Below, in pieces: positions 7,921 through 54,939 of a stretch of DNA of 64,000 bases. Source of the stretch: Okamejei kenojei (taxonomy: Eukaryota); the NCBI GenBank assembly GCA_035221665.1, contig CM069140.1, positions 16,244,001 to 16,308,000 on the forward strand. The letters are read 5' to 3'. The notes under the pieces are model-generated. The model searched no databases. It saw only the letters and a program-made list of their open reading frames with translations, and was not told the origin of the DNA. The stretch's first letter is position 1. Every line of letters starts with the position of its first letter. The position numbers were made by a program, and so were the translations under genes.

Positions 7921-8041
7921 GTAAATTCCCTTCAGCAGAGGAGCCAGGAGCCAGTGAACGGTGCGTGGTCGGGAATGCTCGCCTGACGCCAAGGGGAGTC
8001 CCCTGCGCTTCCAGACGGGGTTATAAAGCGGGGCGGCGGAG
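7921..8041 (+). promoter_or_regulatory. VCAM1-like proximal promoter: kB-like site 7921-7930, CRE half-site 7984, NF-kB consensus GGGAGTCCCC 7994-8003, TATAAA 8022-8027, GC box 8030-8037
   Basis: The motifs are read directly from sequence. TATA lies ~100 bp upstream of the ATG. Mammalian VCAM1 promoters carry TATA-proximal kB sites. Confidence 0.6.
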
Positions 8042-8128
8042 CCCAGGCTCACAGCTCCAGAGCCTGGCGCCTCTTGCAGAAGTGAAGGCAACCTCGGCTT
8101 GTGTGTGTGTCCGAGTGCAGGCTGAACC

Positions 8129-8189
8129 ATGGCGGGAGGGAGATGCGACCCAGCCGCTACAATTACTCTTGCGTTGCTGCTCGCCACAG
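8129..8189 (+). CDS. VCAM1: Exon 1, signal peptide MAGGRCDPAATITLALLLAT(G)
   Basis: Kozak accATGg, hydrophobic stretch, and a phase-1 GT donor at 8190. Confidence 0.8.
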
Positions 8190-11100
8190 GTTTCTAATTT
8201 ATTTTACAGCACTAATAATCTGCATTTTCTTCTGATTCGTTTTGTGTTGCATATCAGGCACCAAAGTGTCAATTTTGAATCTGTTTGTTTAAAGAAATAA
8301 AGAGGTGAACATTTAAAGCGTTAAACTTGTAAGCTTTAAAATAATAATAATATTGCCTTTGTGTTGTTTGAAAACTGCAGGATCCGCCTTCAATTTGGAG
8401 TTAAACCCGTCTGGAAACGTGTGGGCTCGTATCGGGGACTCGCTGGAGTTGAACTGTCTGGCGACGAGCTGCTCGTCTCCGACCTTCATGTGGACAATCG
8501 GCACCGATAACCCCCTGGGCGGAAGAAGCACAACTCGGGGCTCGGTGTCCACATTCACCATCTCCGCGGTTACCCCGCAGAACGAACACAAGTACACTTG
8601 TTCCGCAAAATGCGGCGCAGAAGGAAAACGAAAATATGCCAACCTCCAGATATTCTGTGAGTATTAACCCATCTCCTGACTGTAAACTTGTTGCAACTTT
8701 GTCCGTCCAGATAAAAGTTAAAAAAAACTGGAAACTCTCAACTATTCGTGCAGCCTCCACGAAGAGAGAAATCGAATCTCGACCCAAAACCTTTTCTCTC
8801 TCTACCCAGCTGCCTGACCCGCTGAGTTACTCCAGCTTTTTGTGTCTATCTTCGGTTTAAACCGGCATCTGCATTTCCATCCTATGGCCCTGTCTCACCG
8901 TGCGAGTCATCCCACAAGTGACCCCAAGTGAAAGAAAAAAAACAGACTCGTGGTTATGTAGGAGATTTCAGGTTTATGATCAAGTGTTTAACCGAGTTCC
9001 CACGGGTATGTCATTGCTGCGATGTTCCAAGTTCCTCTCCCGAGTTACCAAGTTCCTCTCCCGTTACTCTTGGAGCCAACCGTGAATGAAGGTAAGTGTG
9101 TGAGGGTGTCTGGGTGCCGGCCGCAGCCGCTGTTCTTTCACATCAGTTGCACATCAGATTGTTGGGAGACGGAGCTCAGGGTTCACCTCCTGAGCTGCTT
9201 TGGTGCCCAGGCGTAAGTTGAGGTGGAGGGTGGTTGGGGGTGGAGGGTGGTTGGGGGTGGGGTAATGACAGACAAGGCTCTTGGGTGCTGGGATCATTCT
9301 CTGCGGGATGGTCTTAGTGCGGGAGACATGTGTAGGAGAGGTGTGCTGACCGCAGGCAGACACTTTGGTAGTGATTGCCCACCAGTCTCAAAAGCCGCTG
9401 TGTCTCCCTGTCCCTATGATAGCAGGGGGCAATCAAGCCCCTCACCCTCCACGCCAACACAAAGGGCAACGATCCCAAGGCTTTAGGGGCAGAAACAGCG
9501 GGCAGGCGACAATCACCCGCCATAACGCGAGAGATATCATGCGCTATTTCCTTTGCACGTCGGTGTTTCTGTATTTCTCCATCTCATTGTTGGCCCTGTC
9601 TGTCGCCACCCCCACCCCCACCCCTCTGCTTCCCGGCCATGTGTGTGACCCCTTCCCTCCCCTCTCCAGCTCCCCGCCCATTGCACCGGGCGCGGGGGCT
9701 TCGCACCGTCTTCATGTTGGCGATGATCCCAAGGCTTTGGACGGAAGGCAGACGCAACAAGCTGGAGTAACAACGCGTGCCAGGTATCATCTCTGGCGAA
9801 TGTGGATAGGTGACATTTCGGATAAGGGCTCGTCTTCTGAAGAAGGATCTCGACCCGAAAAGTCACCTATTCCTTCTCTCCAGAGTTGCTGCCTGACCCG
9901 CAGGGTTACTCCAGCTTTTTTGTGTCTATCGTTGAATGGGTGACGTTTCGGGTCGAGACCCTTCTTCGGACTGAAAATAAAACTTGCCTCGCGTGAAGCG
10001 GCTTGTAAATTAAAACATAAAATCAAGAAATGTTAAAGGTTGACTCATTTATGTGCTGCTATTCATTCACCTGGCCTATTGCTGTCCTCCCTCGTCCACC
10101 GTGAGCGCCGGACAACTCACCGGGTGCAAACCTCCGCTGCATCCCGGGCGGAGGGCGATGATCACCGGACTGACCGGCAAGTAGAGGCGGCGGGTCGGCC
10201 AAGCCCGGCTCCCCGCCACCGGGATAGACACCAACTACTGGACTAAGCTGAGCGGGATCTCTGGAGAAGTCTGAAGTAGGGTCTCGACCCGAAATCTCAC
10301 CCATCCCATCTCTCCAGAGATGCTGCCTGTCCCTCGGAGTTACTCCAACATGGGCCACTACGTTATTACAACATGTTTGATTTTTTTTCACGAGTTAACA
10401 AGTTTCCCGAGTACCTGCCGTTAGCGCCACGAGTCGATAAGTTGCTCGTGCGAGTTCCGACGATCCCGCTACGTGATCACCACGAGTGAAAACTCGGGGT
10501 CACACGTGGGCTAACTCGCACCGTGAGACAGGGGTTTAACACTGAAAGGTCATTGTTCTGGGGAGATTTCACTCGTTGTAGCGCAGCGTCCGGGGAGAGC
10601 AGTTTTCCCTCTGTTTTCTCTCCACCAATACTGCCCGCCCAATGAGTATTTCCGGCACACGTTGTTTTATTCAGGGCCTTCCAACGGCTGCTTTTGTTTT
10701 GGTCTTTAACAATTTTACTTCACAGATTCATGAATGTTCAGAATTCGCCCATTCGGCTCATCGAGTCTATTCCGCCATTCAATCATGGCTGATCCATCTC
10801 TTCCTCCTAACCCCATTCTCCTGCCTTCTCCCCATAACCACAGACACCCGCACTAATCAAGAATCTGCCTATCTCTGCCTTAAATATATCCATTGCCTTG
10901 GCCTCCACAGCCTTCTGTGGCAATGAATTCCGCAGATTCACCACCCTCTGACTAAATCGATGGGCACCTTGGGCTCTGTACATTCCACCCTGAATCCCTG
11001 TTTGATTCCTGAATCCATGTGTCGTTGCAGCTCTGTCCGACACACTCATCGTGGAGACAGTGGGCAGTCTGGAAGTTGGCCAGAGAGGCTCTGTGAGATG

Positions 11101-14100
11101 TACGGTCCCCAAAGTCTACCCCGCTCATGTGGAGGTGGAGTGGCTGAAAGGAACAACGGTGCTGAAGACCGACACCTTCCATGAATACACAGAGGAAGAA
11201 ACGGCGATGAACTTCACCTACGAACTCACGGCCGAATTGCGAGACTCGGGACAAGAGCTGACATGCCGAGTGCAATTACTCACGGACAACCAACCACGCA
11301 AGGCCGAGGGGACTCTAACGTTACAGGTTCACTGTAAGTATGGAGACAGATATATAACATTGAGAAAGGAGTCCCAGTTATAGACGTAGTCTGGACAATG
11401 GCTTGAGTCGCCCGCCTTTAATGTACTGAATGATCCCATCTCCTTCTACAGATGCTCCCACAGGGATTAACATTACTGCGGAGCCCTCTGCCACAGTGAG
11501 AGAGGGTCAGGATGTTTGGCTAACCTGTGCTGCAGACAGCAGCCCCGCTGCCAGGATTGTGTGGAGCAAGTTATCCGCCGGCAACTGGTCAGTCGTGGCC
11601 AAGGACCGAGCGATTCTGCACCTGTCACCCGCCCAGTTCGGGGACACGGGAATGTACCGTTGTGAAGCCAGCAATAAACTGGGGACAATCACCAAGGAGG
11701 TGGAATTCCATGTTCAAGGTGCGTGGGTTTCACTATTGTAATTTTACTATCAGTGTTATAGGAAAGACGTGGTCAAGCTGGAAAGGGTGCAGAGAAGATT
11801 TACCAGGATGTCGCCAGGGCTAGAGGGTCTGAGCTATAGGGAGAGGTTGGGCAGGCTGGGCCTCTATTCCTTGGAGCGCAGATGAGGGGTGATCTTATAG
11901 AGGTGTGTAAATCATGAGAGGAATAGATCAGGTGGATGCAGAGTCTTTTGCCCAGAGTGGGTGCATTGATGACCAGGCATAGGTTTATGGTGAAGGGGAA
12001 AATATTAAATAGGAATCTGAGAGGTACCTTTTTCACACAAAGGGTGGTGGGTGTATGGAACAAGCTGCTAGAGGAGGTAGTGGAGGTAGGGACCATCCAA
12101 ACATTTAAGAAACAGTTAACCAGGTACATGGGTAGGACAGGTTTGGAGGGACATGGACCAAATACGGGCAGGGGGGACTAGTGTAGCTGGGACATGATGG
12201 CTGGTGTGGGCAAGTTGGGCCGAAGGGCCTGTATCACTTTATGACTCTGTTTCTTTGCACGGATTTGGCTAAACTTTTTGCAATTCATTAATTTCTCACG
12301 CCTCTGGTCTCAGGTTGCCCCAGGAACACCACTCTCTCCATCACCCCCTCTGCTGTGAAGGAAGGAGACAGGGTCACGTTCAGCTGCACAACCCAGTCCA
12401 ACCCCCCTGCCCAGCTTGTACTGAGGAGGCAGTCATCGAGCGGATGGAGCGAGCTAGACTCTGAGAATGGGACATTGACAATCCGTGCTGTCCAGCCAGC
12501 TGATGCAGGGCTGTATCAATGTGAGGCCATTAATGATCTGGGGGAGCAAATCAACAGCAACAAACTCCAGGTTCAAGGTTTGTATGTGAATCAATGAGAA
12601 ATTTACAGGAACTGAATGTGAAAAGTATTTTCACTTGAATTATTATGAGAGGGGGAAAGAATGATTTGGATTTATGGGGGAGCATTCATACCATTCAGGA
12701 CTACGCAAACACTTTATCACAAATAAAGTGCCTTTGACTTGTGCAGCAACGAAATGTGGTGCAGCACATTCTCACAAAGAGCAATGTGAGGAAAACCAAT
12801 TAGTTGTGATGATGGAGAAAAATAAATTGTACTAGACTAAGTGGGACCCGTTGGGTCCCAGCTTCACACGGGAGGGCTGGTCCCCCAATGCAATATTCCA
12901 CCTCTCCACCAATTCCAATATTGCTGGCCAGTGAGTGGGGGTTGGGGGGGGGTGGGGGTGGTGGTGGTTCTGGAGCGCTACTATGTGTGTTTCCAGAGGG
13001 CTAGTATGAACATTGTGGGCTGAAAGGATTCTTGGGCTGGCAGCTCAATCACTCAGGCCAGGCAGTTCAGTCACTCTGGCGAGGCAGCTCAGTCACTCTG
13101 GCCAGGCAGCATTTTAGAACCAATAGAGACACTTTTTGTAGGCATTTTAGAACCAATAGAGACACTTTTTGCAAGCATTTTAGAACCAATAGAGACACTT
13201 TCTGCAAGCATTTTAGAACCAATAGACACTTTCTGCAAGCATTTTAGAACCAATAGACACCTTCTGCAAGCATTTTACAACCAATAGAGACACTTTCTGC
13301 AAGCATTTTAGAACCACATTAAGGGCACTCACAGTTGAGTAGACATGTGTTCAGTACTATTCAGAGCTCAGAGACACGTGACCCTCTGGCTTCCTCCATC
13401 TTGCAGAGACTGAGTGAGGCACACCACTTCCTGGTTTTATAGTCCCTCCCCCTCCCTCCAGCAGGGGCAGCAGAGAGAATGGCAAATTAAAAAAATAATA
13501 ATATATCTCTGATTTTTCATTGATGGGAAATATCCTCTGGTCCAGGAAGGCGGAGGGGGGCTCTGAGCGAGCTGGCCAGAAATGACGGCCGTAGGTGGCG
13601 ACGTTCTCTCGGAAATCACATCATAGTGAGCCAAAAGCGGTCAAGATCAGACTTTTATATATATATATATATGCTGATTTACAACAACAAAAAGGCACAA
13701 AGTTCTGCAGTAACTCATTGTGTCAGGTAACATCCCTGGAGAACATAGATGGGTAACGTTTCAAGTTGGGATCCTTCTTCAGACAGGTGTTGGTTTAGTG
13801 ATAAATATTGACTAGGATGCTAGAATAAACTGGGCAGATTTCTGCCACTTTAAATTTAAAATTGTGTGAAAGAATCTTTTATGTCAACTAGAGGGGGCTT
13901 TAATTTAACAACTTGTGTGAAAGTGTAACTAACTGCTGCCATCCTTTGGATCGGGACTGGAGAGACTTTCTAGCTTTTTGTGCCAAATTCCTTGAACAGA
14001 AACTTGAGCTCACAAGTCATGGTGATTATTATAAATTGCAATAATCTATGATTGTAAAAATCATTAATAGACATCATGAGATGAATAGATCGGGTAGATG

Positions 14101-17100
14101 CACATAGTCTCTTGCCCAGAGTAGGTGAATCAAGGACCAGAGAACATAGGTTTAATGTGTAGGGGAAAAGACGTAATAGGAATCTGAGGGGTAACTTTTT
14201 TACACCTAGGGTGGTGGGTGTATGGAACCAGCTGCTGGAGGAGGTAGTTGAGGCTGGGACTATCACAACATTTAAGAAACAGTTAGACAAGAACATGGAT
14301 AGGACAGGTTTGGAGGGACATGGACCAAACACGGGCAGGCGGGACTAGTGTAGCTGGGACATGATGGCTGGTGTGGGCAAGTTGCGCTGAAGGGCCTGTT
14401 TCCACACTGTATCACTTTATGACTATGACTATGTTTCTTTGCACAGATTTGGCTTGACATTTTGCAATTCATTAATTTCTCACGCCTCTGGTCTCAGGTT
14501 GCCCCAGGGACACCACTCTCTCCATCACCCCCTCTGCTGTGAAGGAAGGAGACAGGGTCACCTTCAGCTGCACAACCCAGTCCAACCCCCCTGCCCAGCT
14601 TGTACTGAGGAGGCAGTCATCGAGCGGATGGAGTGAGCTAGACTCTGAGAATGGGACATTGATAATCCATGCTGTCCAGCCTGCTGATGCAGGGCTGTAT
14701 CAATGTGAGGCCATTAATGATCTGGGGAAGCAAATCAACAGCAACAAACTCCAGGTTCAAGGTTTGTATGTAAATCAATGAGAAATTTATTGGAACTGAA
14801 TGTGAAAAGTATTTTCACTTGAATTATTACGAGAGGGGGAAAGAATGATTTGGATTTATGGGGGAGCATTCATACCATCCAGGACTACGCAAACACTTTA
14901 TCACCAATAAAGTGCCTTTGACTTGTGCAGCAACGAAATGTGGTGCAGCACATTCTCACAAAGAGCAATGTGAGGAAAACCAATTAGTTGTGATGATGGA
15001 GAAAAATAAATTGTACTAGACTAAGTGGGACCCGTTGGGTCCCAGCTTCACACGGGAGGGCTGGTCCCCCAATGCAATATTCCACCTCTCCACCAATTCC
15101 AATATTGCTGGCCAGTGAGTGGGGGTTGGGGGGGGGGGTGGGGGTGGTGGTGGTTCTGGAGCGCTAGTATGTGTGTTTCCAGAGGGCTAGTATGAACATT
15201 GTGGGCTGAAAGGATTCTTGGGCTGGCAGCTCAATCACTCTGGCCAGGCAGTTCAGTCACTCTGGCCAGGCAGTTCAGTCACTCTCGCGAGGCAGCTCAG
15301 TCACTCTGGCCAGGCAGCATTTTAGAACCAATAGAGACACTTTTTGTAGGCATTTTAGAACCAATAGAGACACTTTTTGCAAGCATTTTAGAACCAATAG
15401 AGACACTTTCTGCAAGCATTTTAGAACCAATAGACACTTTCTGCAAGCATTTTAGAACCAATAGACACCTTCTGCAAGCATTTTACAACCAATAGAGACA
15501 CTTTCTGCAAGCATTTTAGAACCACATTAAGGGCACTCACAGTTGAGTAGACATGTGTTCAGTACTATTCAGAGCTCAGAGACACGTGACCCTCTGGCTT
15601 CCTCCATCTTGCAGAGACTGAGTGAGGCACACCACTTCCTGGTTTTATAGTCCCTCCCCCTCCCTCCAGCAGGGGCAGCAGAGAGAATGGCAAATTAAAA
15701 AAATAATAATATATCTCTGATTTTTCATTGATGGGAAATATCCTCTGGTCCAAGAAGGCGGAGGGGGGCTCTGAGCGAGCTGGCCAGAAATGACGGCCGT
15801 AGGTGGCGACGTTCTCTCGGAAATCACATCATAGTGAGCCAAAAGCGGTCAAGATCAGACTTTTATATATATATATATGCTGATTTACAACAACAAAAAG
15901 GCACAAAGTTCTGCAGTAACTCATTGTGTCAGGTAACATCCCTGGAGAACATAGATGGGTAACGTTTCAAGTTGGGATCCTTCTTCAGACAGGTGTTGGT
16001 TTAGTGATAAATATTGACTAGGATGCTAGAATAAACTGGGCAGATTTCTGCCACTTTAAATTTAAAATTGTGTGAAAGAATCTTTTATGTCAACTAGAGG
16101 GGGCTTTAATTTAACAACTTGTGTGAAAGTGTAACTAACTGCTGCCATCCTTTGGATCGGGACTGGAGAGACTTTCTAGCTTTTTGTGCCAAATTCCTTG
16201 AACAGAAACTTGAGCTCACAAGTCATGGTGATTATTATAAATTGCAATAATCTATGATTGTAAAAATCATTAATAGACATCATGAGATGAATAGATCGGG
16301 TAGATGCACATAGTCTCTTGCCCAGAGTAGGTGAATCAAGGACCAGAGAACATAGGTTTAATGTGTAGGGGAAAAGACGTAATAGGAATCTGAGGGGTAA
16401 CTTTTTTACACCTAGGGTGGTGGGTGTATGGAACCAGCTGCTGGAGGAGGTAGTTGAGGCTGGGACTATCACAACATTTAAGAAACAGTTAGACAAGAAC
16501 ATGGATAGGACAGGTTTGGAGGGACATGGACCAAACACGGGCAGGCGGGACTAGTGTAGCTGGGCCATGATGGCTGGTGTGGGCAAGTTGCGCTGAAGGG
16601 CCTGTTTCCACACTGTATCACTTTATGACTATGACTATGTTTCTTTGCACAGATTTGGCTTGACATTTTGCAATTCATTAATTTCTCACGCCTCTGGTCT
16701 CAGGTTGCCCCAGGGACACCACTCTCTCCATCACCCCCTCTGCTGTGAAGGAAGGAGACAGGGTCACGTTCAGCTGCACAACCCAGTCCAACCCCCCTGC
16801 CCAGCTTGTACTGAGGAGGCAGTCATCGAGCGGATGGAGTGAGCTAGACTCTGAGAATGGGACATTGACAATCCATGCTGTCCAGCCAGCTGATGCAGGG
16901 CTGTATCAATGTGAGGCCATTAATGATCTGGGGAAGCAAATCAACAGCAACAAACTCCAGGTTCAAGGTTTGTATGTAAATCAATGAGAAATTTATTGGA
17001 ACTGAATGTGAAAAGTATTTTCACTTGAATTATTACGAGAGGGGGAAAGAATGATTTGGATTTATGGGGGAGCATTCATACCATCCAGGACTACGCAAAC

Positions 17101-20100
17101 ACTTTATCACCAATAAAGTGCCTTTGACTTGTGCAGCAACGAAATGTGGTGCAGCACATTCTCACAAAGAGCAATGTGAGGAAAACCAATTAGTTGTGAT
17201 GATGGGGAAAAATAAATTGTATGTGCTGATTTACAACAACAAAAAGACACAATCTTCTGGAATAACTCAGTGTGTCAGGTAACATCCCTGGAGAACATAG
17301 GTGGGTAACATTTCAAGTTGGGATCCTTCTTCAGACTGACGTTGGTTTAGTGATAAATATTGACCAGGATGCTAGAATAAACTGGGCAGAACTCTGCCAC
17401 TTTAAATTTAAAATTGTGTGACATAATCTTTTATGTCAACTAGAGGGTGTTTTAATTTAACAACTTGTGTGAAAGTGTAAAATGATGAAAGGGATAGACA
17501 GAGTTGACGTGGATAAGCTTTTCCCATTGAGGGTAGGGAAGATTCAAACAAGAGGGCATGACATGAGAATTAAGGGACAGAAGTTTAGGGGTAACATGAG
17601 GGGGATCATCTTTACTCGGAGAGTGGTGGCTGTGTGGAATGAGCTTCCAGCAGAAGTGGTGGAGGCAGGATTGATTTTAACATTTAAAAGTATATGGACG
17701 GGAAGGGAATGGAGGGGTATGGTCTGAGTGCAGGTAGATGGGACTAGGGGAAAATAAATGGTCGGCATGGACTGATAGGACCAAAAGGGCATGTTTCCGT
17801 GCTGTAATTGTTATATGGTTATATGGTTATATATGGTAACTAACTGCTGCCATCCTTTGGCACAGGATTGGAGAGACTTTCTAGCTTTTTGTGCCGAATT
17901 CCTTGAACAGAAACTTGAGCTCACAAGTCATGGTGATTATTATAAATTGCAATAATCTATGATTGTAAAAATCATTAATAGACATCATGAGATGAATAGA
18001 TCGGGTAGATGCACATAGTCTCTTGCCCAGAGTAGGTGAATCAAGGACCAGAGAACATAGGTTTAATGTGTAGGGGAAAAGACGTAATAGGAATCTGAGG
18101 GGTAACTTTTTTACACCTAGGGTAGTGGGTGTATGGAACCAGCTGCTGGAGGAGGTAGTTGAGGCTGGGACTATCCCAACATTTAAGAAACAGTTAGACA
18201 AGAACATGGATAGGACAGGTTTGGAGGGACATGGACCAAACACGGGCAGGCGGGACTAGTGTAGCTGGGACATGATGGCTGGTGTGGGCAAGTTGCGCTG
18301 AAGGGCCTGTTTCCACACTGTATCACTTTATGACTATGACTATGTTTCTTTGCACAGATTTGGCTTGACATTTTGCAATTCATTAATTTCTCACGCCTCT
18401 GGTCTCAGGTTGCCCCAGGGACACCACTCTCTCCATCACCCCCTCTGCTGTGAAGGAAGGAGACAGGGTCACGTTCAGCTGCACAACCCAGTCTAACCCC
18501 CCTGCCCAGCTTGTACTGAGGAGGCAGTCATCGAGCGGATGGAGCGAGCTAGACTCTGAGAATGGGACATTGACAATCCATGCTGTCCAGCCTGCTGATG
18601 CAGGGCTGTATCAATGTGAGGCCATTAATGATCTGGGGAAGCAAATCAACAGCAACAAACTCCAGGTTCAAGGTTTGTATGAAATCAATGAGAAATTTAC
18701 AGGATTCCCCTGAATGTGAAAAGTATTTTCACTTGAATTATTATGAGGTGGGAAAGAATGATTTGGATTTATGGGGGAGCATTCATACCATCCAGGACTA
18801 CGCAAACACTTTATCACCAATAAAGTGCCTTTGACCTGTGCAGCAACGAAATGTGGTGCAGCACATTCTCACAAAGAGCAATGTGAGGAAAACCAATTAG
18901 TTGTAATGATGGAGAAATATAAATTGTATATGCTGATTTACAACAACAAAAAGACACAATGTTCTGGAGTAACTCAGTGTGTCAGGTAACATCCCTGGAG
19001 AACATAGATGGGTAACATTTGGTTTAGTGATAAATATTGACCAGGATGCTAGAATAAACTGGGCAGAACTCTGCCACTTGAAATTTAAAATTGTGTGACA
19101 GAATCTTTTATGTCAACTAGAAGGGGTTTTAATTTAACAACTTGTGTGAAAGTGTAAAATGATGAAAGGGATAGACAGAGTTGACGTGGATAAGCTTTTC
19201 CCATTGAGGGTAGGGAAGATTCAAACAAGATGGCATGACATGAGAATTAAGGGACAGAAGTTTAGGGGTAACATGAGGGGGATCTTCTTTACTCGGAGAG
19301 TGGTGGCTGTGTGGAATGAGCTTCCAGCAGAAGTGGTGGAGGCAGGATTGATTTTAACATTTAAAAGTATATGGACGGGAAGGGAATGGAGGGGTATGGT
19401 CTGAGTGCAGGTAGATGGGACTAGGGGAAAATAAATGGTCGGCATGGACTGATAGGACCAAAAGGGCATGTTTCCGTGCTGTAATTGTTATATGGTTATA
19501 TGGTTATATATGGTAACTAACTGCTGCCATCCTTTGGCACAGGATTGGAGAGACTTTCTAGCTTTTTGTGCCGAATTCCTTGAACAGAAACTTGAGCTCA
19601 CAAGTCATGGTGATTATTATAAATTGCAATAATCTATGATTGTAAAAATCATTAATAGACATCATGAGATGAATAGATCGGGTAGATGCACATAGTCTCT
19701 TGCCCAGAGTAGGTGAATCAAGGACCAGAGAACATAGGTTTAATGTGTAGGGGAAAAGACGTAATAGGAATCTGAGGGGTAACTTTTTTACACCTAGGGT
19801 AGTGGGTGTATGGAACCAGCTGCTGGAGGAGGTAGTTGAGGCTGGGACTATCCCAACATTTAAGAAACAGTTAGACAAGAACATGGATAGGACAGGTTTG
19901 GAGGGACATGGACCAAACACGGGCAGGCGGGACTAGTGTAGCTGGGACATGATGGCTGGTGTGGGCAAGTTGCGCTGAAGGGCCTGTTTCCACACTGTAT
20001 CACTTTATGACTATGACTATGTTTCTTTGCACAGATTTGGCTTGACATTTTGCAATTCATTAATTTCTCACGCCTCTGGTCTCAGGTTGCCCCAGGGACA

Positions 20101-23100
20101 CCACTCTCTCCATCACCCCCTCTGCTGTGAAGGAAGGAGACAGGGTCACGTTCAGCTGCACAACCCAGTCTAACCCCCCTGCCCAGCTTGTACTGAGGAG
20201 GCAGTCATCGAGCGGATGGAGCGAGCTAGACTCTGAGAATGGGACATTGACAATCCATGCTGTCCAGCCTGCTGATGCAGGGCTGTATCAATGTGAGGCC
20301 ATTAATGATCTGGGGAAGCAAATCAACAGCAACAAACTCCAGGTTCAAGGTTTGTATGAAATCAATGAGAAATTTACAGGATTCCCCTGAATGTGAAAAG
20401 TATTTTCACTTGAATTATTACGAGAGGGGGAAAGAATGATTTGGATTTATGGGGGAGCATTCATATCATCCAGGACTACGCAAACACTTTATCACCAATA
20501 AAGTGCCTTTGACCTGTGCAGCAACGAAATGTGGTGCAGCACATTCTCACAAAGAGCAATGTGAGGAAAACCAATTAGTTGTAATGATGGAGAAATATAA
20601 ATTGTATATGCTGATTTACAACAACAAAAAGACACAATGTTCTGGAGTAACTCAGTGTGTCAGGTAACATCCCTGGAGAACATAGATGGGTAACATTTGG
20701 TTTAGTGATAAATATTGACCAGGATGCTAGAATAAACTGGGCAGAACTCTGGCACTTGAAATTTAAAATTGTGTGACAGAATCTTTTATGTCAACTAGAG
20801 GGGGTTTTAATTTAACAACTTGTGTGAAAGTGTAAAATGATGAAAGGGATAGACAGAGTTGACGTGGATAAGCTTTTCCCATTGAGGGTAGGGAAGATTC
20901 AAACAAGAGGGCATGACATGAGAATTAAGGGACAGAAGTTTAGGGGTAACATGAGGGGGATCTTCTTTACTCGGAGAGTGGTGGCTGTGTGGAATGAGCT
21001 TCCAGCAGAAGTGGTGGAGGCAGGATCGATTTTAACATTTAAAAGTATATGGAAGGGAATGGAGGGGTATGGTCTGAGTGCAGGTAGATGGGACTAGGGG
21101 AAAATAAATGGTCGGCACGGACTGATAGGACCGAAAGGGCCTGTTTCCGTGCTGTAATTGTTATATGGTTATATGGTTATGTATGGTAACTAACTGCTGC
21201 CATCCTTTGGCAGAGGATTGGAGAGACTTTCTAGCTTTTGTGCCAAATTCCTTGAACGGAAACTTGAGCTCACAAGTCATGGTGATTATTATAAATTGCA
21301 ATAATCTATGATTGTAAAAATCATTAATAGACATCATGAGATGAATAGATCGGGTAGATGCACATAGTCTCTTGCCCAGAGTAGGTGAATCAAGGACCAG
21401 AGAACATAGGTTTAATGTGTAGGGGAAAAGACGTAATAGGAATCTGAGGGGTAACTTTTTTACACCTAGGGTGGTGGGTGTATGGAACCAGCTGCTGGAG
21501 GAGGTAGTTGAGGCTGGGACTATCCCAACATTTAAGAAACAGTTAGACAAGAACATGGATAGGACAGGTTTGGAGGGATAAGGACCAAACACGGGCAGGC
21601 GGGACTAGTGTAGCTGGGACATGATGGCTGGTGTGGGCAAGTTGCGCTGAAGGGCCTGTTTCCACACTGTATTACTTTATGACTATGACTATGTTTCTTT
21701 GCACGGATTTGGCTTAACTTTTTGCAATTCATTAATTTCTCACGCCTCTGGTCTCAGGTTGCCCCAGGGACACCACTCTCTCCATCACCCCCTCTGCTGT
21801 GAAGGAAGGAGACAGGGTCACGTTCAGCTGCACAACCCAGTCCAACCCCCCTGCCCAGCTTGTACTGAGGAGGCAGTCATCGAGCGGATGGAGCGAGCTT
21901 GACTCTGAGAATGGGACATTGACAATCCGTGCTGTCCAGCCAGCTGATGCAGGGCTGTATCAATGTGTGGCCATTAATGATCTGGGGGAGCAAATCAACA
22001 GCAACAAACTCCAGGTTCAAGGTTTGTATGCAAATCAATGAGAAATTTACAGGAACTGAATGTGAAAAGTATTTTCACTTGAATTATTACGAGAGGGGGA
22101 AAGAATGATTTGGATTTATAGGGGAGCATTCATACCATCCAGGACTACGCAAACACTTTATCACCAATAAAGTGCCTTTGACCTGTGCAGCAACGAAATG
22201 TGGTGCAGCACATTCTCACAAAGAGCAATGTGACGAAAACCAATTAGTTGTGATGATGGAGAAAAATTAATTGTATGTGCTGATTTACAACACCAAAAAG
22301 ACACAATGTTCTGGAGTAACTCAGTGTGTCAGGTAACATCCCTGGAGAACATAGATGGGTAACTTTTCAAGTTGGGATCCTTCTTCAGACTGATGTTGGT
22401 TTAGTGATAAATATTGACCAGGATGCTAGAATAAACTGGGCAGAACTCTGCCACTTTAAATTTAAAATTGTGTGACAGAATATTTTATGTCAACTAGAGG
22501 GGGTTTTAATTTAACTTGTGTAAAATGATGAAAGGGATAGACAGAGTTGACGTGGATAAGCTTTTCCCATTGAGGGTAGGGAAGATTCAAACAAGACGGC
22601 ATGACATGAGAATTAAGGGACAGAAGTTTAGGGGTAACATGAGGTGGAACTTCTTTACTCCAAGAGTGGCGGCTGTGTGGAATGAGCTTCCAGCAGAAGT
22701 GGTGGAGGCAGGATCGATTTTAACATTTAAAAGTATATGGACGGGAAGGGAATGGAGGGGTATGGTCTGAGTGCAGGTAGATGGGACTAGGGGAAAATAA
22801 ATGGTCGGCACGGACTGATAGGACCAAAATGGCCTGTTTCCGTACTGTAATTGTTATATGGTTATATGGTTATGTATGGTAACTAACTGCTGCCATCCTT
22901 TGGCACAGGATTGGAGAGACTTTCTAGCTTTTTGTGCCGAATTCCTTGAACAGAAACTTGAGCTCACCAGTCATGGTGATTATTATAAATTGCAATAATC
23001 TATGATTGTAAAAATCATTAATAGACATCATGAGATGAATAGATCGGGTAGATGCACATAGTCTCTTGCCCAGGGTAGGTGAATCAAGGACCAGAGAACA

Positions 23101-26100
23101 TAGGTTTAATGTGTAGGGGAAAAGACTTAATAGGAATCTGAGGGGTAACTTTTTTACACCTAGGGTGGTGGGTGTATGGAACCAGCTGCTGGAGGAGGTA
23201 GTTGAGGCTGGGACTATCCCAACATTTAAGAAACAGTTAGACAAGAACATGGATAGGACAGGTTTGGAGGCACATGGACCAAACACGGGCAGGCGGAACT
23301 AGTGTAGCTGGGACATGATGGCTGGTGTGGGCAAGTTGCGCTGAAGGGCCTGTTTCCACACTGTATCACTTTAAGACTATATCTATGTTTCTTTGCACAG
23401 ATTTGGCTTGACTTTTTGCAATTCATTAATTTCTCACGCCTCTGGTCTCAGGTTGCCCCAGGGACACCACTCTCTCCATCACCCCCTCTGCTGTGAAGGA
23501 AGGAGACAGGGTCACGTTCAGCTGCACAACCCAGTCCAACCCCCCTGCCCAGCTTGTACTGAGGAGGCAGTCATCGAGCGGATGGAGCGAGCTAGACTCT
23601 GAGAATGGGACATTGACAATCCGTGCTGTCCAGCCAGCTGATGCAGGGCTGTATCAATGTGAGGCCATTAATGATCTGGGGAAGCAAATCAACAGCAACA
23701 AACTCCAGGTTCAAGGTTTGTATGTAAATCAATGAGAAATTTATTGGAACTGAATGTGAAAAGTATTTTCACTTGAATTATTACGAGAGGGGGAAAGAAT
23801 GATTTGGATTTATGGGGGAGCATTCATACCATCCAGGACTACGCAAACACTTTATCACCAATAAAGTGCCTTTGAATTGTGCAGCAACGAAATGTGGTGC
23901 AGCACATTCTCACAAGGAGCAATGTGAGGAAAACCAATTAGTTGTGATGATGGAGAAAAATAAATTGTATGTGCTGATTTACAACAACAAAAAGACACAA
24001 TGTTCTGGAGTAACTCAGTGTGTCAGGTAACATCCCTGGAGAACATAGATGGGTAACATTTCAAGTTGGGATCCTTCTTCAGACTGATGTTGGTTTAGTG
24101 ATAAATATTGACCAGGATGCTAGAATAAACTGGGCAGAACTCTGCCACTTTAAATTTAAAATTGTGTGACAGAATATTTTATGTCAACTGGAGGGGGTTA
24201 TGTGAAAGTGTAACTAACTGCTGCCGTCCTTTGGCACAGGATTGGAGAGACTTTCTATCTTTTTGTGCCAAATTCCTTGAATAGAAACTTGAGCTCACAA
24301 GTCATGGTGATTATTATAAATTGCAATAATCTATGATTGTAAAAATCATTAATAGACATCATGAGATGAATAGATCGGGTAGATGCACATAGTCTCTTGC
24401 CCAGAGTAGGTGAATCAAGGACCAGAGAACATAGGTTTAATGTGTAGGGGAAAAGACGTAATAGGAATCTGAGGGGTAACTTTTTTACACCTAGGGTGGT
24501 GGGTGTATGGAACCAGCTGCTGGAGGAGGTAGTTGAGGCTGGGACTATCCCAACATTTAAGAAACAGTTAGACAAGAACATGGATAGGACAGGTTTGGAG
24601 GCACATGGACCAAACACGGGCAGGCGGGACTAGTGTAGCTGGGACATGATGGCTGGTGTGGGCAAGTTGCGCTGAAGGGCCTGTCTCCACACTGTATCAC
24701 TTTAAGACTATGTCTATGTTTCTTTGCACAGATTTGGCTTGACATTTTGCAATTCATTAATTTCTCACGCCTCTGGTCTCAGGTCGCCCCAGGGACACCA
24801 CTCTCTCCATCACCCCCTCTGCTGTGAAGGAAGGAGACAGGGTCACGTTCAGCTGCACAACCCAGTCCAACCCCCCTGCCCAGCTTGTACTGAGGAGGCA
24901 GTCATCGAGCGAATGGAGCGAGCTAGACTCTGAGAATGGGACATTGACAATCCATGCTGTCCAGCCAGCTGATGCAGGGCTGTATCAATGTTTGGCCATT
25001 AATGATCTGGGGGAGCAAATCAACAGCAACAAACTCCAGGTTCAAGGTTTGTATGTAAATCAATGAGAAATTCATTGGAACTGAATGTGAAAAGTATTTT
25101 CACTTGAATATTACGAGAGGGGGAAAGAATGATTTGGATTTATGGGGGAGCATTCATACCATCCAGGACTACGCAAACACTTTATCACCAATAAAGTGCC
25201 TTTGACTTGTGCAGCAACGAAATGTGGTGCAGCACATTCTCACAAGGAGCAATGTGAGGAAAACCAATTAGTTGTGATGATGGAGAAAAATAAATTGTAT
25301 ATGCTGATTTACAACATCAAAAAGACACAATGTTCTGGAGTAACTCAGTGTGTCAGGTAACATCCCTGGAGAGCATAGATGGGTAACGTTTCAAGTTGGG
25401 ATCCTTCTTCAGACTGATGTTGGTTTAGTGATAAATGTTGACCAGGATGCTAGAATAAACTGGGCAGAACTCTGCCACTTTAAATTTAAAATTGTATGAC
25501 ATAATATTTTATGTCAACTAGAGGGGGTTTTAATTTAACAGCTTATGTGAAAGTGTAACTAACTGCTGCCATCCTTTGGCACAGGACTGGAGAGACTTTC
25601 TAGCTTTTTGTGCCTAATGCCTTGAGCAGAAACCTGAGCTCACAAGTCATGGTGATCATTATAAATTGCAATAATCTATGATTGTAACAATCATTAATAG
25701 ACATCATGAGATGTGCAGATCGGGTAGATGCACAGCGTCATTAGACATGTATTTCCCCCTCATCACCAAACCTGAATGTTTGGGCACATCCTTCCAAACT
25801 GGTCGATGAAGGAGAAAAGGTCACCATTGGTTGCACCATTCATAACATCCACTTAGCCAATTTCACCTGGAAGAAACTAGTGAACAACTGTGAAAATGTG
25901 CTGTCCTTCAGTAACAACAACTTTACAATCCTTGAAAAATACACCAAGTGATGCTGGGCTTTGTAAGGTCAAAGCGATTAATAAACATGGGAAACAGACA
26001 GAATTTGTGGAAATACAAGTTATCGGTAAGTTTAAGTATAGATTGAGAATTGTTGTGTGGAGAAAGTATTTTACTGATATTGTTCTTTAAAAATATTCTT

Positions 26101-26263
26101 CTGTCTCTTTGCAGAAAAAATACCTGATATAGCAACACCTGCTGAGATAGTGTGCACAGGAGCCGCAATTGCATCAGCAGGACTGATATTTTCTGCTCTG
26201 TATTATGCCTTTCGCAGAAGCAACTTGACAAAATCTTACAAAATAGCGGGAGAGATACTGTGA
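8129..26263 (+). CDS. VCAM1: VCAM1-like Ig-superfamily adhesion protein, 13 coding exons, ~1055 aa: signal peptide, 11 Ig domains, TM, short tail
   Basis: Exons 8129-8189, 8381-8656, 11031-11333, 11452-11718, eight 264-bp exons and 26115-26263 all have GT-AG boundaries in phase 1. They join into a 3168-nt open frame. D1, D2 and the tail resemble mammalian VCAM1. Confidence 0.88.
8381..8656 (+). CDS. VCAM1: Exon 2, Ig domain D1 (integrin-binding)
   Basis: FNLELNP..ARIGDSLELNCLATSCSSPTFMWTIGTDNPLGG..QNEHKYTCSAKC has the four-Cys D1 pattern and the CD-loop Asp (human QIDSPL). Splice sites tgcag| and |gtgagt. Confidence 0.92.
8885..10536. mobile_element. Non-autonomous TIR DNA transposon (PIF/Harbinger-like) in intron 2, with nested repeats
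   Basis: Terminal inverted repeats ccctgtctcaccgtgcgagt and actcgcaccgtgagacaggg, with TWA-like flanks. Confidence 0.6.
11031..11333 (+). CDS. VCAM1: Exon 3, Ig domain D2
   Basis: SLEVGQRGSVRCTVPKVYP..EWLKG..DSGQELTCRVQL resembles VCAM1 D2. Splice sites ttgcag| and |gtaagt. Confidence 0.92.
11452..11718 (+). CDS. VCAM1: Exon 4, Ig domain D3 (D3/D6-like)
   Basis: YAPTGINITAEP..VREGQDVWLTC..IVWSK..DTGMYRCEASNKLG..KEVEFHVQ. Splice sites ctacag| and |gtgcgt. Confidence 0.92.
11750..12235 (+). mobile_element. CR1 3' fragment in intron 4
   Basis: Encodes remnants LERVQRRFTRM and FFTQRVVGVWNKL. Confidence 0.85.
12314..12577 (+). CDS. VCAM1: Repeat Ig exon R1 (VCAM1 D7-like)
   Basis: GCPRNTTLSITPSAVKEGDRVTFSC..LVLRR..DAGLYQCEAINDLG..LQVQ. 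Splice sites tctcag| and |gtttgt, 88 codons. Confidence 0.88.
12832..13669 (-). mobile_element. Non-autonomous Helitron in the intron after R1
   Basis: Minus-strand 3' end has hairpin TGGGACCC-AAC-GGGTCCCA then CTTAGT-CTAG. It is inserted at an A|T site with no TSD (empty site ttgta|t in other units) and has an internal ~33-bp minisatellite. Confidence 0.8.
14498..14761 (+). CDS. VCAM1: Repeat Ig exon R2
   Basis: Intact 264-bp copy with splice sites conserved. Confidence 0.88.
15016..15875 (-). mobile_element. Non-autonomous Helitron, duplicated copy in the intron after R2
   Basis: Same site and nearly the same sequence as 12832-13669. Confidence 0.8.
16704..16967 (+). CDS. VCAM1: Repeat Ig exon R3
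   Basis: Intact 264-bp copy. Confidence 0.88.
17481..17839 (+). mobile_element. CR1 3' insertion shared by units 3-6 (also 19158-19516, 20836-21189, 22524-22882)
   Basis: MMKGIDRVDVDKLFP..VWNELP with a (ttatatgg)n tail, flanked by a GTAA duplication. Absent from units 1, 2, 7 and 8. Confidence 0.85.
18409..18672 (+). CDS. VCAM1: Repeat Ig exon R4
   Basis: Intact 264-bp copy. Confidence 0.88.
20086..20349 (+). CDS. VCAM1: Repeat Ig exon R5
   Basis: Intact 264-bp copy. Confidence 0.88.
21758..22021 (+). CDS. VCAM1: Repeat Ig exon R6
   Basis: Intact 264-bp copy (CVAIN variant). Confidence 0.88.
23452..23715 (+). CDS. VCAM1: Repeat Ig exon R7
   Basis: Intact 264-bp copy. Confidence 0.88.
24783..25046 (+). 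CDS. VCAM1: Repeat Ig exon R8
   Basis: Intact 264-bp copy (GRPR, SSEW, CLAIN variants). Confidence 0.88.
25752..26025 (+). pseudogene. Degenerate membrane-proximal Ig exon (pseudoexon)
   Basis: SPNLNVWAHPSKLVDEGEKVTIGC..FTWKK, then a +1 frameshift at gaaaaat (~25935) into TPSDAGLCKVKAINKHG..EIQVI|gtaag. No in-phase AG acceptor is visible. Confidence 0.7.
26115..26263 (+). CDS. VCAM1: Final exon: transmembrane and cytoplasmic tail
   Basis: (E)KIPDIATPAEIVCTGAAIASAGLIFSALYYAFRRSNLTKSYKIAGEIL*; compare human IYFARKANMKGSYSL. Strong acceptor tctttgcag. Confidence 0.9.
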
Positions 26264-26789
26264 AGTGAAAACAAAGGACCAAAGGAATGGACATTCACAC
26301 TTCTAGCACCGATCAATCTCTGGGACTGTGCTGCTATGGGCAGGGAGTTGGGAAATGACTGAGCTGGATTATAACAAGATTCAAAATATTACCAACAGCT
26401 GGTATCTAAAGCGCGGTCAGTAAACCTGAACTTGGGGCACTTTATTGTATATAATACTCAGAATTTGCTGGCGTTCTTGCGAGGAATAGTACTGTGCTAA
26501 GGAAATAGTGCACAAACAATTCACTTGAAAAAGTTCTCTGGCCTAAACAAATACATTTTCGATATCTCTATCCCATGTTCCAGGCATAATTCGAACTATT
26601 AGCACTCTTCAGTGAAACAGATCTAGATTTTTCAGATGCAAAATGGTGCTGGACTTGATCCCATCCTTCCCTTGTGGGTAAAGGGAGGCCATTGTGAGCC
26701 CAGAGCAAGGCACTTTACACTTGCTGTTCTACTGTTTATGGATCAAAAATTATTTGACCTCCTACGGCGATGATTATTTGACCTCCTAC

Positions 26790-54930: not shown

Positions 54931-54939
54931 CTGCGATTT

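What the first reader, a model, noticed from the sequence alone, without database searches (positions are those of the whole stretch)
8129..26263. VCAM1-like receptor with an extended, possibly variable-length stalk: one D7-like Ig exon amplified eight-fold
Seen: one ligand-binding D1-D2-D3 head is followed by eight 264-bp exons differing by only a few residues. All are open, phase 1-1 and keep their splice sites. Known: human VCAM1 has 7 domains from a D1-3/D4-6 duplication plus a single D7, and D7 has the same non-Trp C-strand pattern (IILKK there, LVLRR here). Inference: this lineage lengthened the membrane-proximal spacer rather than duplicating the binding head, giving 11 Ig domains. Because every exon is symmetric, both exon skipping and unequal crossover could change the reach of the integrin-binding site without a frameshift.
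Basis: partly seen in the sequence, partly recalled or inferred. Interest (0 to 1): 0.85.

Follow-up and report, generated by a model that had tools for sequence, protein, structure and literature searches.

The report
Skate VCAM1 with eight-fold repeated stalk
This is a skate's version of the leukocyte-adhesion receptor VCAM1 in which one immunoglobulin-domain exon has been copied eight times in a row, and related skates and sharks carry from 1 to at least 14 copies, so the length of this receptor evolves unusually fast.

Summary
Eight 264-bp exons (R1-R8, 12314-25046) have AG/GT borders, are phase 1-1, are all open, and differ at 0-9 bases. They sit in 1.3-2.2 kb tandem units.

The gene is a VCAM1 family member. 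D1 and D2 match solved human VCAM1, and the integrin-loop Asp and the cytoplasmic-tail motif are conserved. The closest database proteins are RefSeq "VCAM1-like" models of skates and sharks.

The predicted product has 1055 aa and 11 Ig domains.

- A ninth Ig exon (about 25745-26025), the ancestral Cys-less membrane-proximal domain, is dead here. It has a frameshift and no in-phase acceptor.
- A second, badly sequenced or decayed VCAM1-like copy lies at 53-62 kb.
- The array is not unique to this genome. Models show at least 14 R domains in Amblyraja, 13 in Rhinoraja, about 2 in Leucoraja and 1-5 in sharks. Shark isoforms differ by exactly one or two R exons.

R copies cluster by species, which means concerted evolution or repeated bursts. 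One RNA-like contig carries a spliced R-to-R junction.

Transcript-level exon counts and within-species polymorphism remain untested. I class this as a new variant of a known kind, of moderate interest.

The parts
7993..8003 (.). Palindromic NF-kappaB-consensus site (GGGRNWYYCC on both strands), about 20 nt upstream of the TATA-like box
   Evidence: the whole 64-kb window has only 3 matches, against 11 expected by chance, and two of them are this site. Its function is inferred, not tested.
8022..8028 (+). TATA-like box TATAAAG, 101 nt upstream of the ATG
   Evidence: Read directly.
8129..8189 (+). Exon 1, coding part: signal peptide MAGGRCDPAATITLALLLAT, ends in phase 1
   Evidence: The same peptide and the same junction into D1 occur in the Amblyraja model P0001.
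8381..8656 (+). D1 exon (276 nt): integrin-binding-type I-set domain with four Cys and a WTIGTDNPLGG C-D loop
   Evidence: human VCAM1 D1 (1VCA, 1VSC, 1IJ9), E 1.8e-17. Pfam I-set and Ig_3; the loop Asp is conserved from sharks to mammals.
11031..11333 (+). D2 exon (303 nt), ICAM/VCAM-type second domain
   Evidence: human VCAM1 D2, E 1.8e-6. PF21146 ICAM1_3_5_D2 scores 29.2 bits, above its cut-off of 27.5.
11452..11718 (+). D3 exon (267 nt), I-set domain with the canonical C-strand Trp
   Evidence: It falls in the D3 clade in the domain tree.
11911..12239 (+). Part of the D3-R1 intron homologous to the 3' part of every R-R intron, but only about 85-88% identical to it. This old flank was not homogenised; identity jumps to 96-98% from about 12240.
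   Evidence: 84.5-85% over 425 columns. families D20 (88%) and D1 (96-98%).
12314..12577 (+). R1 exon (264 nt, phase 1-1). The only copy with an NTT sequon at its start.
12832..13667 (+). 836-nt insertion in the intron of unit 1, with 22-nt and 33-nt tandem repeats. Shared with unit 2 (15016-15873) only.
14498..14761 (+). R2 exon
16704..16967 (+). R3 exon (protein identical to R4 and R5)
17452..17835 (+). About 384-nt transposon-like insertion in the intron of unit 3, shared by units 3-6 only
   Evidence: ORF of the type MMKGIDRVDVDKLF...VWNELP.
18409..18672 (+). R4 exon (identical to R5 at the DNA level)
20086..20349 (+). R5 exon
21758..22021 (+). R6 exon
23452..23715 (+). R7 exon. Unit 7 (1331 nt) has neither insertion, so it is the minimal unit.
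24783..25046 (+). R8 exon, the most diverged copy. Its first full codon is CGC (Arg) instead of TGC (Cys).
   Evidence: In one search a 294-nt contig of run X15 joins 24931-25044 to 24781-24960, which is a spliced R-to-R junction.
25047..25734 (+). Intron after R8, homologous (93-97%) to the 5' part of every R-R intron. Repeat homology ends at 25734.
25745..26025 (+). Dead exon of the ancestral Cys-less 'last' Ig domain. Homology to the shark domain starts near 25772. An A5 run at 25935-25939 shifts the frame (..FTILEKYTK* versus +1 frame NTPSDAGLCKVKAINKHGKQTEFVEIQVI). The nearest acceptor AG (25743-25744) is out of phase with R8. The donor GTAAGT at 26026 is intact.
   Evidence: 60% and 56% identity to the last domain of sawshark VCAM1-like P0003 (E 1e-21 and 1e-7); an independent DNA contig of X1 covers 25859-25986 without a gap, and three RNA-like runs have zero depth over 25814-26116; the Leucoraja model reads the same shifted 'FTILEKYT'.
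26115..26263 (+). Last coding exon: juxtamembrane segment, transmembrane helix (IVCTGAAIASAGLIFSALYYAF) and a 16-aa tail RRSNLTKSYKIAGEIL, stop at 26261-26263
   Evidence: 79-85% identical to the Amblyraja and Leucoraja gene B terminal exon, and the tail motif is shared with all vertebrate VCAM1. The R-to-TM junction LQVQ|EKIPDIATPAE is the one annotated in P0160; run X17 covers 26173-26700.

Best explanation
The region 8129-26263 holds one gene. It is the upstream member of a tandem pair of VCAM1 co-orthologues in a skate (Rajiformes). The species is not Leucoraja erinacea, Amblyraja radiata or Rhinoraja longicauda.

The gene has 13 coding exons, all in phase 1: signal peptide, D1, D2, D3, eight R exons, and one exon for the transmembrane helix and a short tail. 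They encode a 1055-aa type I membrane protein with 11 Ig domains.

Shown:
- The head D1-D2 is VCAM1-like, with the conserved Asp in the integrin-contact loop.
- Each R exon is an I-set domain of the same type as the penultimate domain of other vertebrates' VCAM1, which is D7 in eutherians.
- The array arose by tandem duplication of a unit made of one R exon plus a hybrid intron. The hybrid intron is the 5' part of the R-to-last-domain intron fused to the 3' part of the D3-to-R intron.
- The units share nested insertions (units 1-2; units 3-6), so the array grew stepwise.
- The unique flank before R1 is about five times more diverged from the internal copies than these are from each other, and R copies cluster by species. 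The array is therefore old but is kept uniform, or is repeatedly rebuilt, by unequal crossing-over or gene conversion.
- The exon for the ancestral Cys-less last domain is dead.

Inferred:
- R8 splices directly to the TM exon, as annotated for the paralogue in related skates.
- The protein is an integrin (alpha4-type) counter-receptor whose binding head is held further from the membrane, roughly 8 extra domains. Its reach changes in whole-domain steps without frameshift, by crossover over evolutionary time and possibly by exon skipping.
For: Exon anatomy.

VCAM1 identity: D1 against 1VCA, E 1.8e-17; D2, E 1.8e-6; ICAM1_3_5_D2 above its cut-off; nearest proteins named VCAM1-like in 20+ cartilaginous and bony vertebrates; TDNPLGG loop and RRxN..K.SY tail.

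Splice junctions: every junction of the model is found in a RefSeq model of a related skate.

Array is real:
- Units differ by distinct insertions and lengths.
- An independent DNA run holds the R unit in a contig of depth 228, against 65-70 on the single-copy flanks (a weak measure).
- Independent assemblies of Amblyraja and Rhinoraja give 14 and 13 R domains.

Constraint:
- Variable sites number 13 of 264 in exons against 64 of 632 in introns shared by all units (Fisher p = 0.012).
- None of the 12 small indels touches an exon.
- R is the best-conserved domain across cartilaginous fish: 70% identity to sawshark against 45% for D1.

Expression: a spliced R-to-R contig, with no depth on introns or on the dead exon, in RNA-like runs.

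Concerted evolution: the window's 8 R copies form a clade (99/94) and Rhinoraja's 15 form another (100/99). The flank is 85% identical to internal copies, while the internal copies are 98% identical to each other.
Against: - No raw RNA reads were available. All runs were Logan contigs, and the tool itself flags X15 as 'probably DNA'. How many R exons a transcript carries is therefore unknown.
- The gene's own TM exon and 3' UTR were covered only in a run of another species (X17), not in the two RNA-like runs of the closest organism.
- No RefSeq model of a related skate ends its long-array gene in a TM exon. They read into an intron or fuse with the next gene.
- No canonical poly(A) signal lies within 1.3 kb of the stop.
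- Integrin binding and any benefit of length are inferred from homology and analogy only.
- The high conservation of R argues that it is more than a passive spacer.
Confidence: 0.78

Rival explanations
1. The array is genuine DNA, but most mature transcripts carry only a subset of the R exons. The identical splice sites would make the R exons a pool of cassette exons, so the usual protein would be much shorter than 11 domains and of mixed length.
For: All eight exons have identical acceptor and donor contexts and are symmetric. RefSeq isoforms of great white shark (880 and 704 aa) and Heptranchias (712 and 624 aa) differ by exactly two and one R domain. By my own knowledge, human VCAM1 skips its D4 exon.
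Against: A spliced R-to-R junction exists in an RNA-like contig. The Amblyraja model strings 14 R exons together. In run X17 the R contig is about 4.7 times as deep as the 3' UTR contig, although the tool warns that contig depth is unreliable.
Confidence: 0.25
2. The assembly has over-expanded a shorter array, so there are fewer than eight units in the real genome.
For: Units are 95-99% alike, which is the regime where assemblers err. Another part of the same window (55.4-62.2 kb) is riddled with 1-nt indels next to an N gap.
Against: Units differ in length and carry nested, distinct insertions (836 nt in units 1-2; about 384 nt in units 3-6), a 28-nt deletion in units 4-5, and 13 variable exon sites. 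The array itself is free of frame errors. The independent DNA run shows excess depth on the unit. Two other skate assemblies show even longer arrays.
Confidence: 0.06
3. The long-array gene is a decaying duplicate, and the working VCAM1 of skates is the short paralogue (D1-D3, two R, TM). The array would then be neutral expansion in a gene on its way to loss.
For: The last-domain exon is already dead. Related skates' long-array models lack a clean 3' end. The closest organism's RNA-like runs did not cover this TM exon.
Against: All 13 exons are open with intact splice sites. Exons vary half as much as introns and carry no indels. The only indel seen in the TM exon between individuals is in frame, at 21 nt. 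R is the most conserved domain across species. In this window it is the second copy, not this one, that looks broken.
Confidence: 0.07
4. The gene is not VCAM1 but another multi-Ig protein, such as hemicentin-2-like (as Amblyraja's model is named) or a Siglec/CD22-type receptor.
For: NCBI named XP_032885016 'hemicentin-2-like'. R and D3 alone hit titin, contactins and MDGA best in the PDB.
Against: D1 and D2 hit VCAM1 specifically. There is no V-set sialic-acid domain and no EGF or G2F modules. The tail is VCAM1-type. All other relatives are named VCAM1. The hemicentin name is explained by the long run of I-set domains.
Confidence: 0.03

Closest known systems
VCAM1 (CD106) of mammals and other vertebrates
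   Same: It has one Ig domain per phase-1 exon. D1 has two disulfides and an Asp-bearing C-D loop. D2 is VCAM/ICAM-type. There is a single TM helix and a short tail with the K.SY motif. R resembles D7, the penultimate domain type.
   Different: There is no D1-D3/D4-D6 head duplication. Eight near-identical D7-type domains stand in place of one. The Cys-less last domain that sharks, birds, turtles, caecilians and platypus keep is a dead exon here. Eutherians also lack it, so the loss is parallel.
RefSeq models of skate and shark VCAM1-like genes (XP_032885016 Amblyraja radiata 'hemicentin-2-like'; Rhinoraja longicauda 'vcam1b'; Leucoraja erinacea, Carcharodon and Scyliorhinus VCAM1-like)
   Same: They have the same head, the same R domain (87-94% identical among skates) and the same junctions. 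They show arrays of 13-14 R in two skates and 1-5 R in sharks, with isoforms that differ by whole R domains.
   Different: Copy number differs: 8 here. R copies carry species-specific residues in every copy. Three of the skate models are visibly defective: one is truncated in an intron and two fuse two genes. I found no paper describing these arrays.
Sialoadhesin / Siglec-1 (17 Ig domains)
   Same: It is an adhesion receptor with one N-terminal binding domain on a long rod of Ig domains. Truncation experiments show that length is needed to escape cis-inhibition: about 33 nm for 17 domains against about 14 nm for 6 (PMC10027830). This is the best functional analogy for an extended VCAM1.
   Different: It is a different family, with a V-set lectin head. 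Its 16 C2-set domains are old and diverged, not a young homogenised exon array.
In-frame intragenic exon arrays with copy-number change by unequal crossover (LPA kringle IV-2 repeat, CR1 long homologous repeats; from my own knowledge, not tested here)
   Same: Tandem units contain whole symmetric exons, the introns are also nearly identical, and protein length changes in modular steps.
   Different: Within-species polymorphism, which defines those human cases, is not yet shown here. The unit here is a single Ig exon of a cell-adhesion receptor.

Membership tests
VCAM1 (vascular cell adhesion protein 1) family | N-terminal I-set domain with an extra disulfide (four Cys) and an acidic residue in the C-D loop (QIDSPL in human) | tested here: met
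   aligned to human VCAM1 residues 1-86, E 1.8e-17, with all four Cys aligned; the loop is WTIGTDNPLGG, identical in TDNPLGG to kiwi and sawshark.
VCAM1 (vascular cell adhesion protein 1) family | Second domain of the ICAM/VCAM type | tested here: met
   human VCAM1 D2 is the best PDB hit, E 1.8e-6. PF21146 scores 29.2 bits against a cut-off of 27.5.
VCAM1 (vascular cell adhesion protein 1) family | One Ig domain per exon, all in phase 1, with the last exon encoding TM plus a short cytoplasmic tail | tested here: met
   The human gene structure is taken from my own knowledge (Cybulsky 1991, a paper not held in the library).
VCAM1 (vascular cell adhesion protein 1) family | Conserved cytoplasmic tail motif R(R/K)xNxK(G)SY | tested here: met
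   by-eye comparison of C-termini of 21 species (window RRSNLTKSYKIAGEIL; rodent RKANMKGSYSLVEAQKSKV). BLASTP of this short exon against rodent was not significant.
VCAM1 (vascular cell adhesion protein 1) family | Closest named relatives are VCAM1 | tested here: met
   the top hits to R and to the skate and sawshark proteins are VCAM1 or VCAM1-like from sharks, rays, lungfish, amphibians, reptiles, birds and mammals.
VCAM1 (vascular cell adhesion protein 1) family | Conserved synteny (GPR88 next to VCAM1, as on human 1p21) | not tested
It lies outside the sequence I can read.
VCAM1 (vascular cell adhesion protein 1) family | Binds alpha4beta1/alpha4beta7 integrin | not testable with these tools
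   Needs an adhesion assay.
Seven-domain VCAM1 architecture (D1-3 duplicated as D4-6) | A second D1-D2-D3 block | tested here: not met
   the gene has no second D1 or D2. This duplication is seen in rodent, gar, sturgeon and milkfish, but also not in sharks, birds, turtles or caecilians, so it does not define the family.
In-frame exon array with modular length variation (LPA KIV-2 / CR1 type) | Tandem units holding whole symmetric exons, with introns nearly identical as well | tested here: met
In-frame exon array with modular length variation (LPA KIV-2 / CR1 type) | Copy number differs between individuals of one species | not testable with these tools
   Only contigs were available. Between species the number differs: about 2, 8, 13 and at least 14.

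The most novel reading that the evidence does not exclude
The R array is a length-polymorphic module within skate populations, comparable to an LPA-like VNTR in an adhesion receptor. It would be further tuned by exon skipping. In this species the Cys fixed at the start of seven of the eight R domains would zip two chains into a disulfide-linked parallel rod. That would make a covalently dimerised VCAM1 of extendable reach, with R being more than a spacer, since it is the most conserved domain of the protein.
Probability: 0.25. Interest if true: 0.7.

Novelty: new variant of a known kind. Interest (0 to 1): 0.5.

Why it matters
VCAM1 is a central leukocyte-endothelium adhesion receptor, and how far its integrin-binding head must stand above the membrane has hardly been studied. 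Cartilaginous fish supply a natural series of the same receptor with 1 to at least 14 copies of one stalk domain. The extremes are in skates, and the same domain type also expanded independently in lungfish and frogs.

This series is a ready-made set of constructs for testing length against adhesion under flow, as was done for sialoadhesin (PMC10027830).

It is also a clean vertebrate example of concerted evolution of a single-exon protein module, with a datable unhomogenised flank.

It explains faulty automatic annotations in skates: the 'hemicentin-2-like' name, models that fuse two genes, and models truncated in an intron.

The gene family and the principle of exon amplification are both known, so this refines current understanding and does not overturn it.

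Tried and rejected
Every search was exon by exon by reference, or with database proteins.
I therefore could not read the Amblyraja, Leucoraja or Rhinoraja loci to compare introns, check their TM exons or confirm copy numbers.
- Reads: no run on record is RNA, and all four runs laid were Logan contigs. My plan to estimate R exons per transcript and genomic copy number from depth ratios could not be carried out properly. I report contig depths only as weak hints.
- I chose the 3' stretch (24400-27400), so the D3-to-R1 junction was not tested with reads. It rests on related species' models.
- PDB searches with D3 and R gave only generic I-set hits (titin, contactins) and no family assignment.
- BLASTP of the 48-aa TM/tail exon against rodent VCAM1 was not significant. 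The tail motif rests on comparison by eye.
- A first hydrophobicity scan with a strict threshold found no TM segment. A looser one found it.
- Literature: five searches for VCAM1 domain-number evolution in sharks, skates or fish found nothing relevant. The 1991 gene-structure paper is not held.
- No TM exon for the second gene copy was found before the window ends.
- Rejected readings: assembly artefact, hemicentin or Siglec identity, pseudogene. The reasons are under Rival explanations.
- No structure prediction was run. The Pfam scores (E about 1e-14) made it unnecessary.

Full report
OBSERVATION

The claim is correct in every particular I could test. A repeat scan finds eight copies of a unit spaced 2184, 2206, 1705, 1677, 1672, 1694 and 1331 nt apart. 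Each unit contains an exon of exactly 264 nt. The exons lie at 12314, 14498, 16704, 18409, 20086, 21758, 23452 and 24783. Each is preceded by the same tract ending in ...tctggtctcAG and followed by GTTTGTAT. Each starts with two bases and ends with one base of a split codon (phase 1-1). None has a stop. They differ at 0-9 bases and 0-5 residues. R4 and R5 are identical in DNA, and R3, R4 and R5 are identical in protein.

The other exons also have AG/GT borders and phase 1:
- signal peptide, 8129-8189
- D1, 8381-8656
- D2, 11031-11333
- D3, 11452-11718
- TM/tail exon, 26115-26263

The coding exons sum to 3168 nt, which gives 1055 codons plus the stop. All searches were made exon by exon.

WHAT THE GENE IS

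- D1 aligns with mature human VCAM1 from its first residue (E 1.8e-17). All four cysteines align, and the integrin-contact loop reads GTDNPLGG where human has QIDSPLNG.
- D2 has human VCAM1 D2 as its best solved relative (E 1.8e-6). It passes Pfam's cut-off for the ICAM-type second domain.
- D3 and R are generic I-set domains by PDB and Pfam.
- A full-library search with the R exon gave, as its best named relatives, VCAM1 or VCAM1-like proteins of skates, rays, sharks, lungfish, amphibians, reptiles, birds and monotremes.
- The transmembrane/tail exon ends in RRSNLTKSYKIAGEIL. The motif R(R/K)xN.K.SY is present in all 21 VCAM1 C-termini I printed.
- An earlier, unchecked note of this scan places a GPR88-like ORF 32.7 kb upstream. 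That would match human synteny, but I could not read it.

Every junction of the model occurs in a RefSeq model of a related skate:
- signal to D1
- D1 to D2 (IF-S-LSDTL)
- D2 to D3 (QVH-Y-APT)
- D3 to R (HVQ-G-.PR)
- R to R
- R to TM (LQVQ-E-KIPDIATPAE)

By identity (85-93% to Amblyraja and Leucoraja, 68-81% to Rhinoraja) the window comes from another skate.

(a) A ninth Ig-like exon lies between R8 and the TM exon.
- Its two halves are 60% and 56% identical to the last, Cys-less domain of sawshark VCAM1-like (E 1e-21 and 1e-7).
- A run of five A at 25935-25939 shifts the frame, giving ..FTILEKYTK-stop.
- The only nearby acceptor is out of phase with R8, so inclusion would end the protein.
- The frameshift is not an assembly slip. 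An independent DNA contig covers it without a gap, and the Leucoraja gene model reads the same shifted FTILEKYT.
- Three RNA-like runs have no depth on it.
- Sharks, birds, turtles, a caecilian and platypus keep this domain. Skates have lost it, and so have eutherians, in parallel.

(b) A second VCAM1-like copy starts at 53025.
- Its promoter, signal exon and D1 are 97.8% identical to the first copy.
- D2, D3 and one R follow up to 62153.
- From 55.4 kb on it carries about 15 one-base indels per exon, next to an N gap.
- It is therefore either poorly sequenced or a pseudogene. Related skates have an intact short paralogue there (D1-D3, two R, TM).

(c) The array is not peculiar to this genome. 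R-domain counts in gene models are as follows:

| Species or group | R domains in models |
|---|---|
| Amblyraja | at least 14 |
| Rhinoraja | 13 (+2 in the fused paralogue) |
| Leucoraja | about 2 |
| Sawfish | 1 |
| Sharks | 1-5 |

- Stingrays instead repeat a D3-R pair.
- Lungfish and tree frogs have their own runs of the same domain type.
- Great white shark isoforms (880 and 704 aa) and Heptranchias isoforms (712 and 624 aa) differ by exactly two and one R domain.

HOW THE ARRAY AROSE AND IS MAINTAINED

Self-comparison shows that each R-R intron is a hybrid. Its first part matches the intron after R8 (up to 25734). Its last part matches the intron before R1 (from 11911). The founding event therefore joined the two introns that flanked a single ancestral R exon.

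Unit 7 is the minimal unit. Units 1-2 share an 836-858-nt insertion, and units 3-6 share a roughly 384-nt transposon-like insertion.

The unique flank before R1 is only about 85-88% identical to the internal copies, while those are about 98% identical to each other. Identity jumps to 96-98% some 75 nt before R1.

In a domain tree all cartilaginous-fish R domains form one clade (97/93). Inside it the copies group by species: the window's eight (99/94) and Rhinoraja's fifteen (100/99, with copies of both paralogues mixed).

Together this means an old first duplication followed by continuing homogenisation or turnover, through unequal crossing-over or gene conversion.

CONSTRAINT

- Exons have half the variable sites of the introns shared by all units (13 of 264 against 64 of 632; p = 0.012).
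- Exons have none of the 12 small indels.
- Across species R is the most conserved domain: 70% identity to sawshark, against 45% for D1. This argues that R does more than fill space.
- Each R carries one NGT sequon.
- In this species R1-R7 begin with an extra Cys, where R8 has Arg and other skates have Ser or Gly. The T of this TGC codon is confirmed in the independent DNA run.

IS R 'D7-LIKE'?

Rodent D7 and the penultimate domain of platypus, turtle and caecilian share two things with R: the Trp-less C strand (IILKK / IVLRK / LVLRR) and the pattern VKEGD.V..SCT...DAG.YECE. D3/D6-type domains keep the Trp.

In the tree these domains lie with R and the 'last' domains and apart from D3, but the branching among them is unresolved. 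Position also agrees, since R sits just before the last domain. The claim is reasonable but not proven as orthology.

EXPRESSION AND ASSEMBLY CHECKS

Only Logan contigs were available, and none is on record as RNA. On 24400-27400:
- A 294-nt contig of run X15 joins the end of an R exon to the start of an R exon at the exact splice borders.
- X15, X16 and X17 have depth on R but none on the unique intron 25107-25308 or on the dead exon.
- X17, from another species, covers the TM exon and 3' UTR.
- The DNA run X1 covers everything. Its R-unit contig has depth 228 against 65-70 on single-copy flanks. The tool warns that this is not a copy number.
- X1 also carries 21 extra bases after 26146, in frame. 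This matches the NPAGVLE segment of other skates, so the window's allele has an in-frame deletion.

MECHANISM

Shown: a VCAM1-type head on a rod of eight near-identical Ig domains, anchored by a conserved TM and tail, in a gene whose length module can change by whole domains without frameshift.

Inferred: it binds alpha4-type integrins through D1, and the added domains raise the binding site above the cell coat. For sialoadhesin, 17 domains reach about 33 nm and 6 domains about 14 nm, and short forms fail to bind because of cis-inhibition (PMC10027830). By that yardstick eight extra domains add roughly 15 nm.

A palindromic NF-kappaB consensus sits at 7993-8003, about 20 nt before a TATA-like box. 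It is one of only two such places in the 64 kb. This fits cytokine-inducible expression as in mammals, which I know from my own knowledge and did not test.

VERDICT

It is a new variant of a known kind. The family, the exon-per-domain layout and modular exon amplification are all known, and related arrays already sit, badly annotated, in RefSeq. I found no paper that describes them. Interest is moderate (0.5). It would rise if length polymorphism within species or a functional role of stalk length were shown.

Noticed in passing
window 53025-62153: A second VCAM1-like gene copy lies here: promoter, signal exon and D1 at 53025-53783 (97.8% identical to 8040-8789), D2 at 55612-55920, D3 at 56040-56296, and one R at 61863-62153. 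From 55.4 kb on it carries about 15 one-base indels per exon, next to the N gap at 55225-55366. D1 has a 4-nt insertion. No TM exon was found before the window ends. It is either raw-read-quality sequence or a pseudogene.
   Followed up: partly
window 26144-26147: The independent DNA run X1 has 21 extra bases after 26146 (in frame) and G>A at 26144, in its only contig there. Other skates encode NPAGVLE at this spot. The window's allele therefore has an in-frame 7-codon deletion in the juxtamembrane segment.
   Followed up: partly
window 12316, 14500, 16706, 18411, 20088, 21760, 23454 (first full codon of R1-R7): Each of R1-R7 starts with an extra, unpaired Cys (TGC). R8 has CGC (Arg), and other skates have Ser or Gly. 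That puts seven free cysteines along the stalk, which could form interchain disulfides. The T is confirmed in DNA run X1.
   Followed up: partly
window 7993-8028: A palindromic NF-kappaB consensus site lies about 20 nt upstream of a TATAAAG box and 126 nt upstream of the ATG. The whole window has only 3 matches, against 11 expected by chance.
   Followed up: partly
proteins P0217, P0029, P0218 (stingrays Hemitrygon, Hypanus, Mobula): Stingray VCAM1-like proteins repeat a two-domain D3-R unit (D1-D2-D3-R-D3-R(-D3)) instead of R alone. This is a different solution to lengthening the same stalk.
   Followed up: partly
proteins P0228 (rodent), P0041 (platypus), P0222, P0224, P0013: The Cys-less 'last' domain is present in platypus, turtle, kiwi, caecilian and sharks but absent from the rodent 7-domain protein. 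Eutherians and skates seem to have lost it independently.
   Followed up: partly
proteins P0160 (Leucoraja erinacea, 1067 aa), P0159 (Rhinoraja longicauda, 2100 aa), P0001 (Amblyraja radiata, 1554 aa): These RefSeq models look faulty. The first two fuse the two tandem VCAM1-like genes through junk sequence. The third is named hemicentin-2-like and ends by reading into an intron (..LQVQGIPRNQWKCD..).
   Followed up: partly
window 26264-27600: No AATAAA or ATTAAA lies within 1.3 kb downstream of the stop codon. From about 26790 the sequence is a very high-copy repeat (contig depths above 100,000 in all runs). The 3' end of the transcript is undefined.
   Followed up: no
window 39490-40920 (-), 47519-49586 (-), 42855-43451 (-), 36491-36952 (+): Long ORFs of transposon type (reverse-transcriptase-like and related) fill the 26 kb between the two VCAM1-like copies.
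   Followed up: no
window 60069-61228 and 53969-54372: A 64/128-nt satellite-like tandem array of about 18 copies lies inside the second gene copy's intron. A 400-nt (AC)n tract and a C-rich low-complexity tract border the N gap.
   Followed up: no
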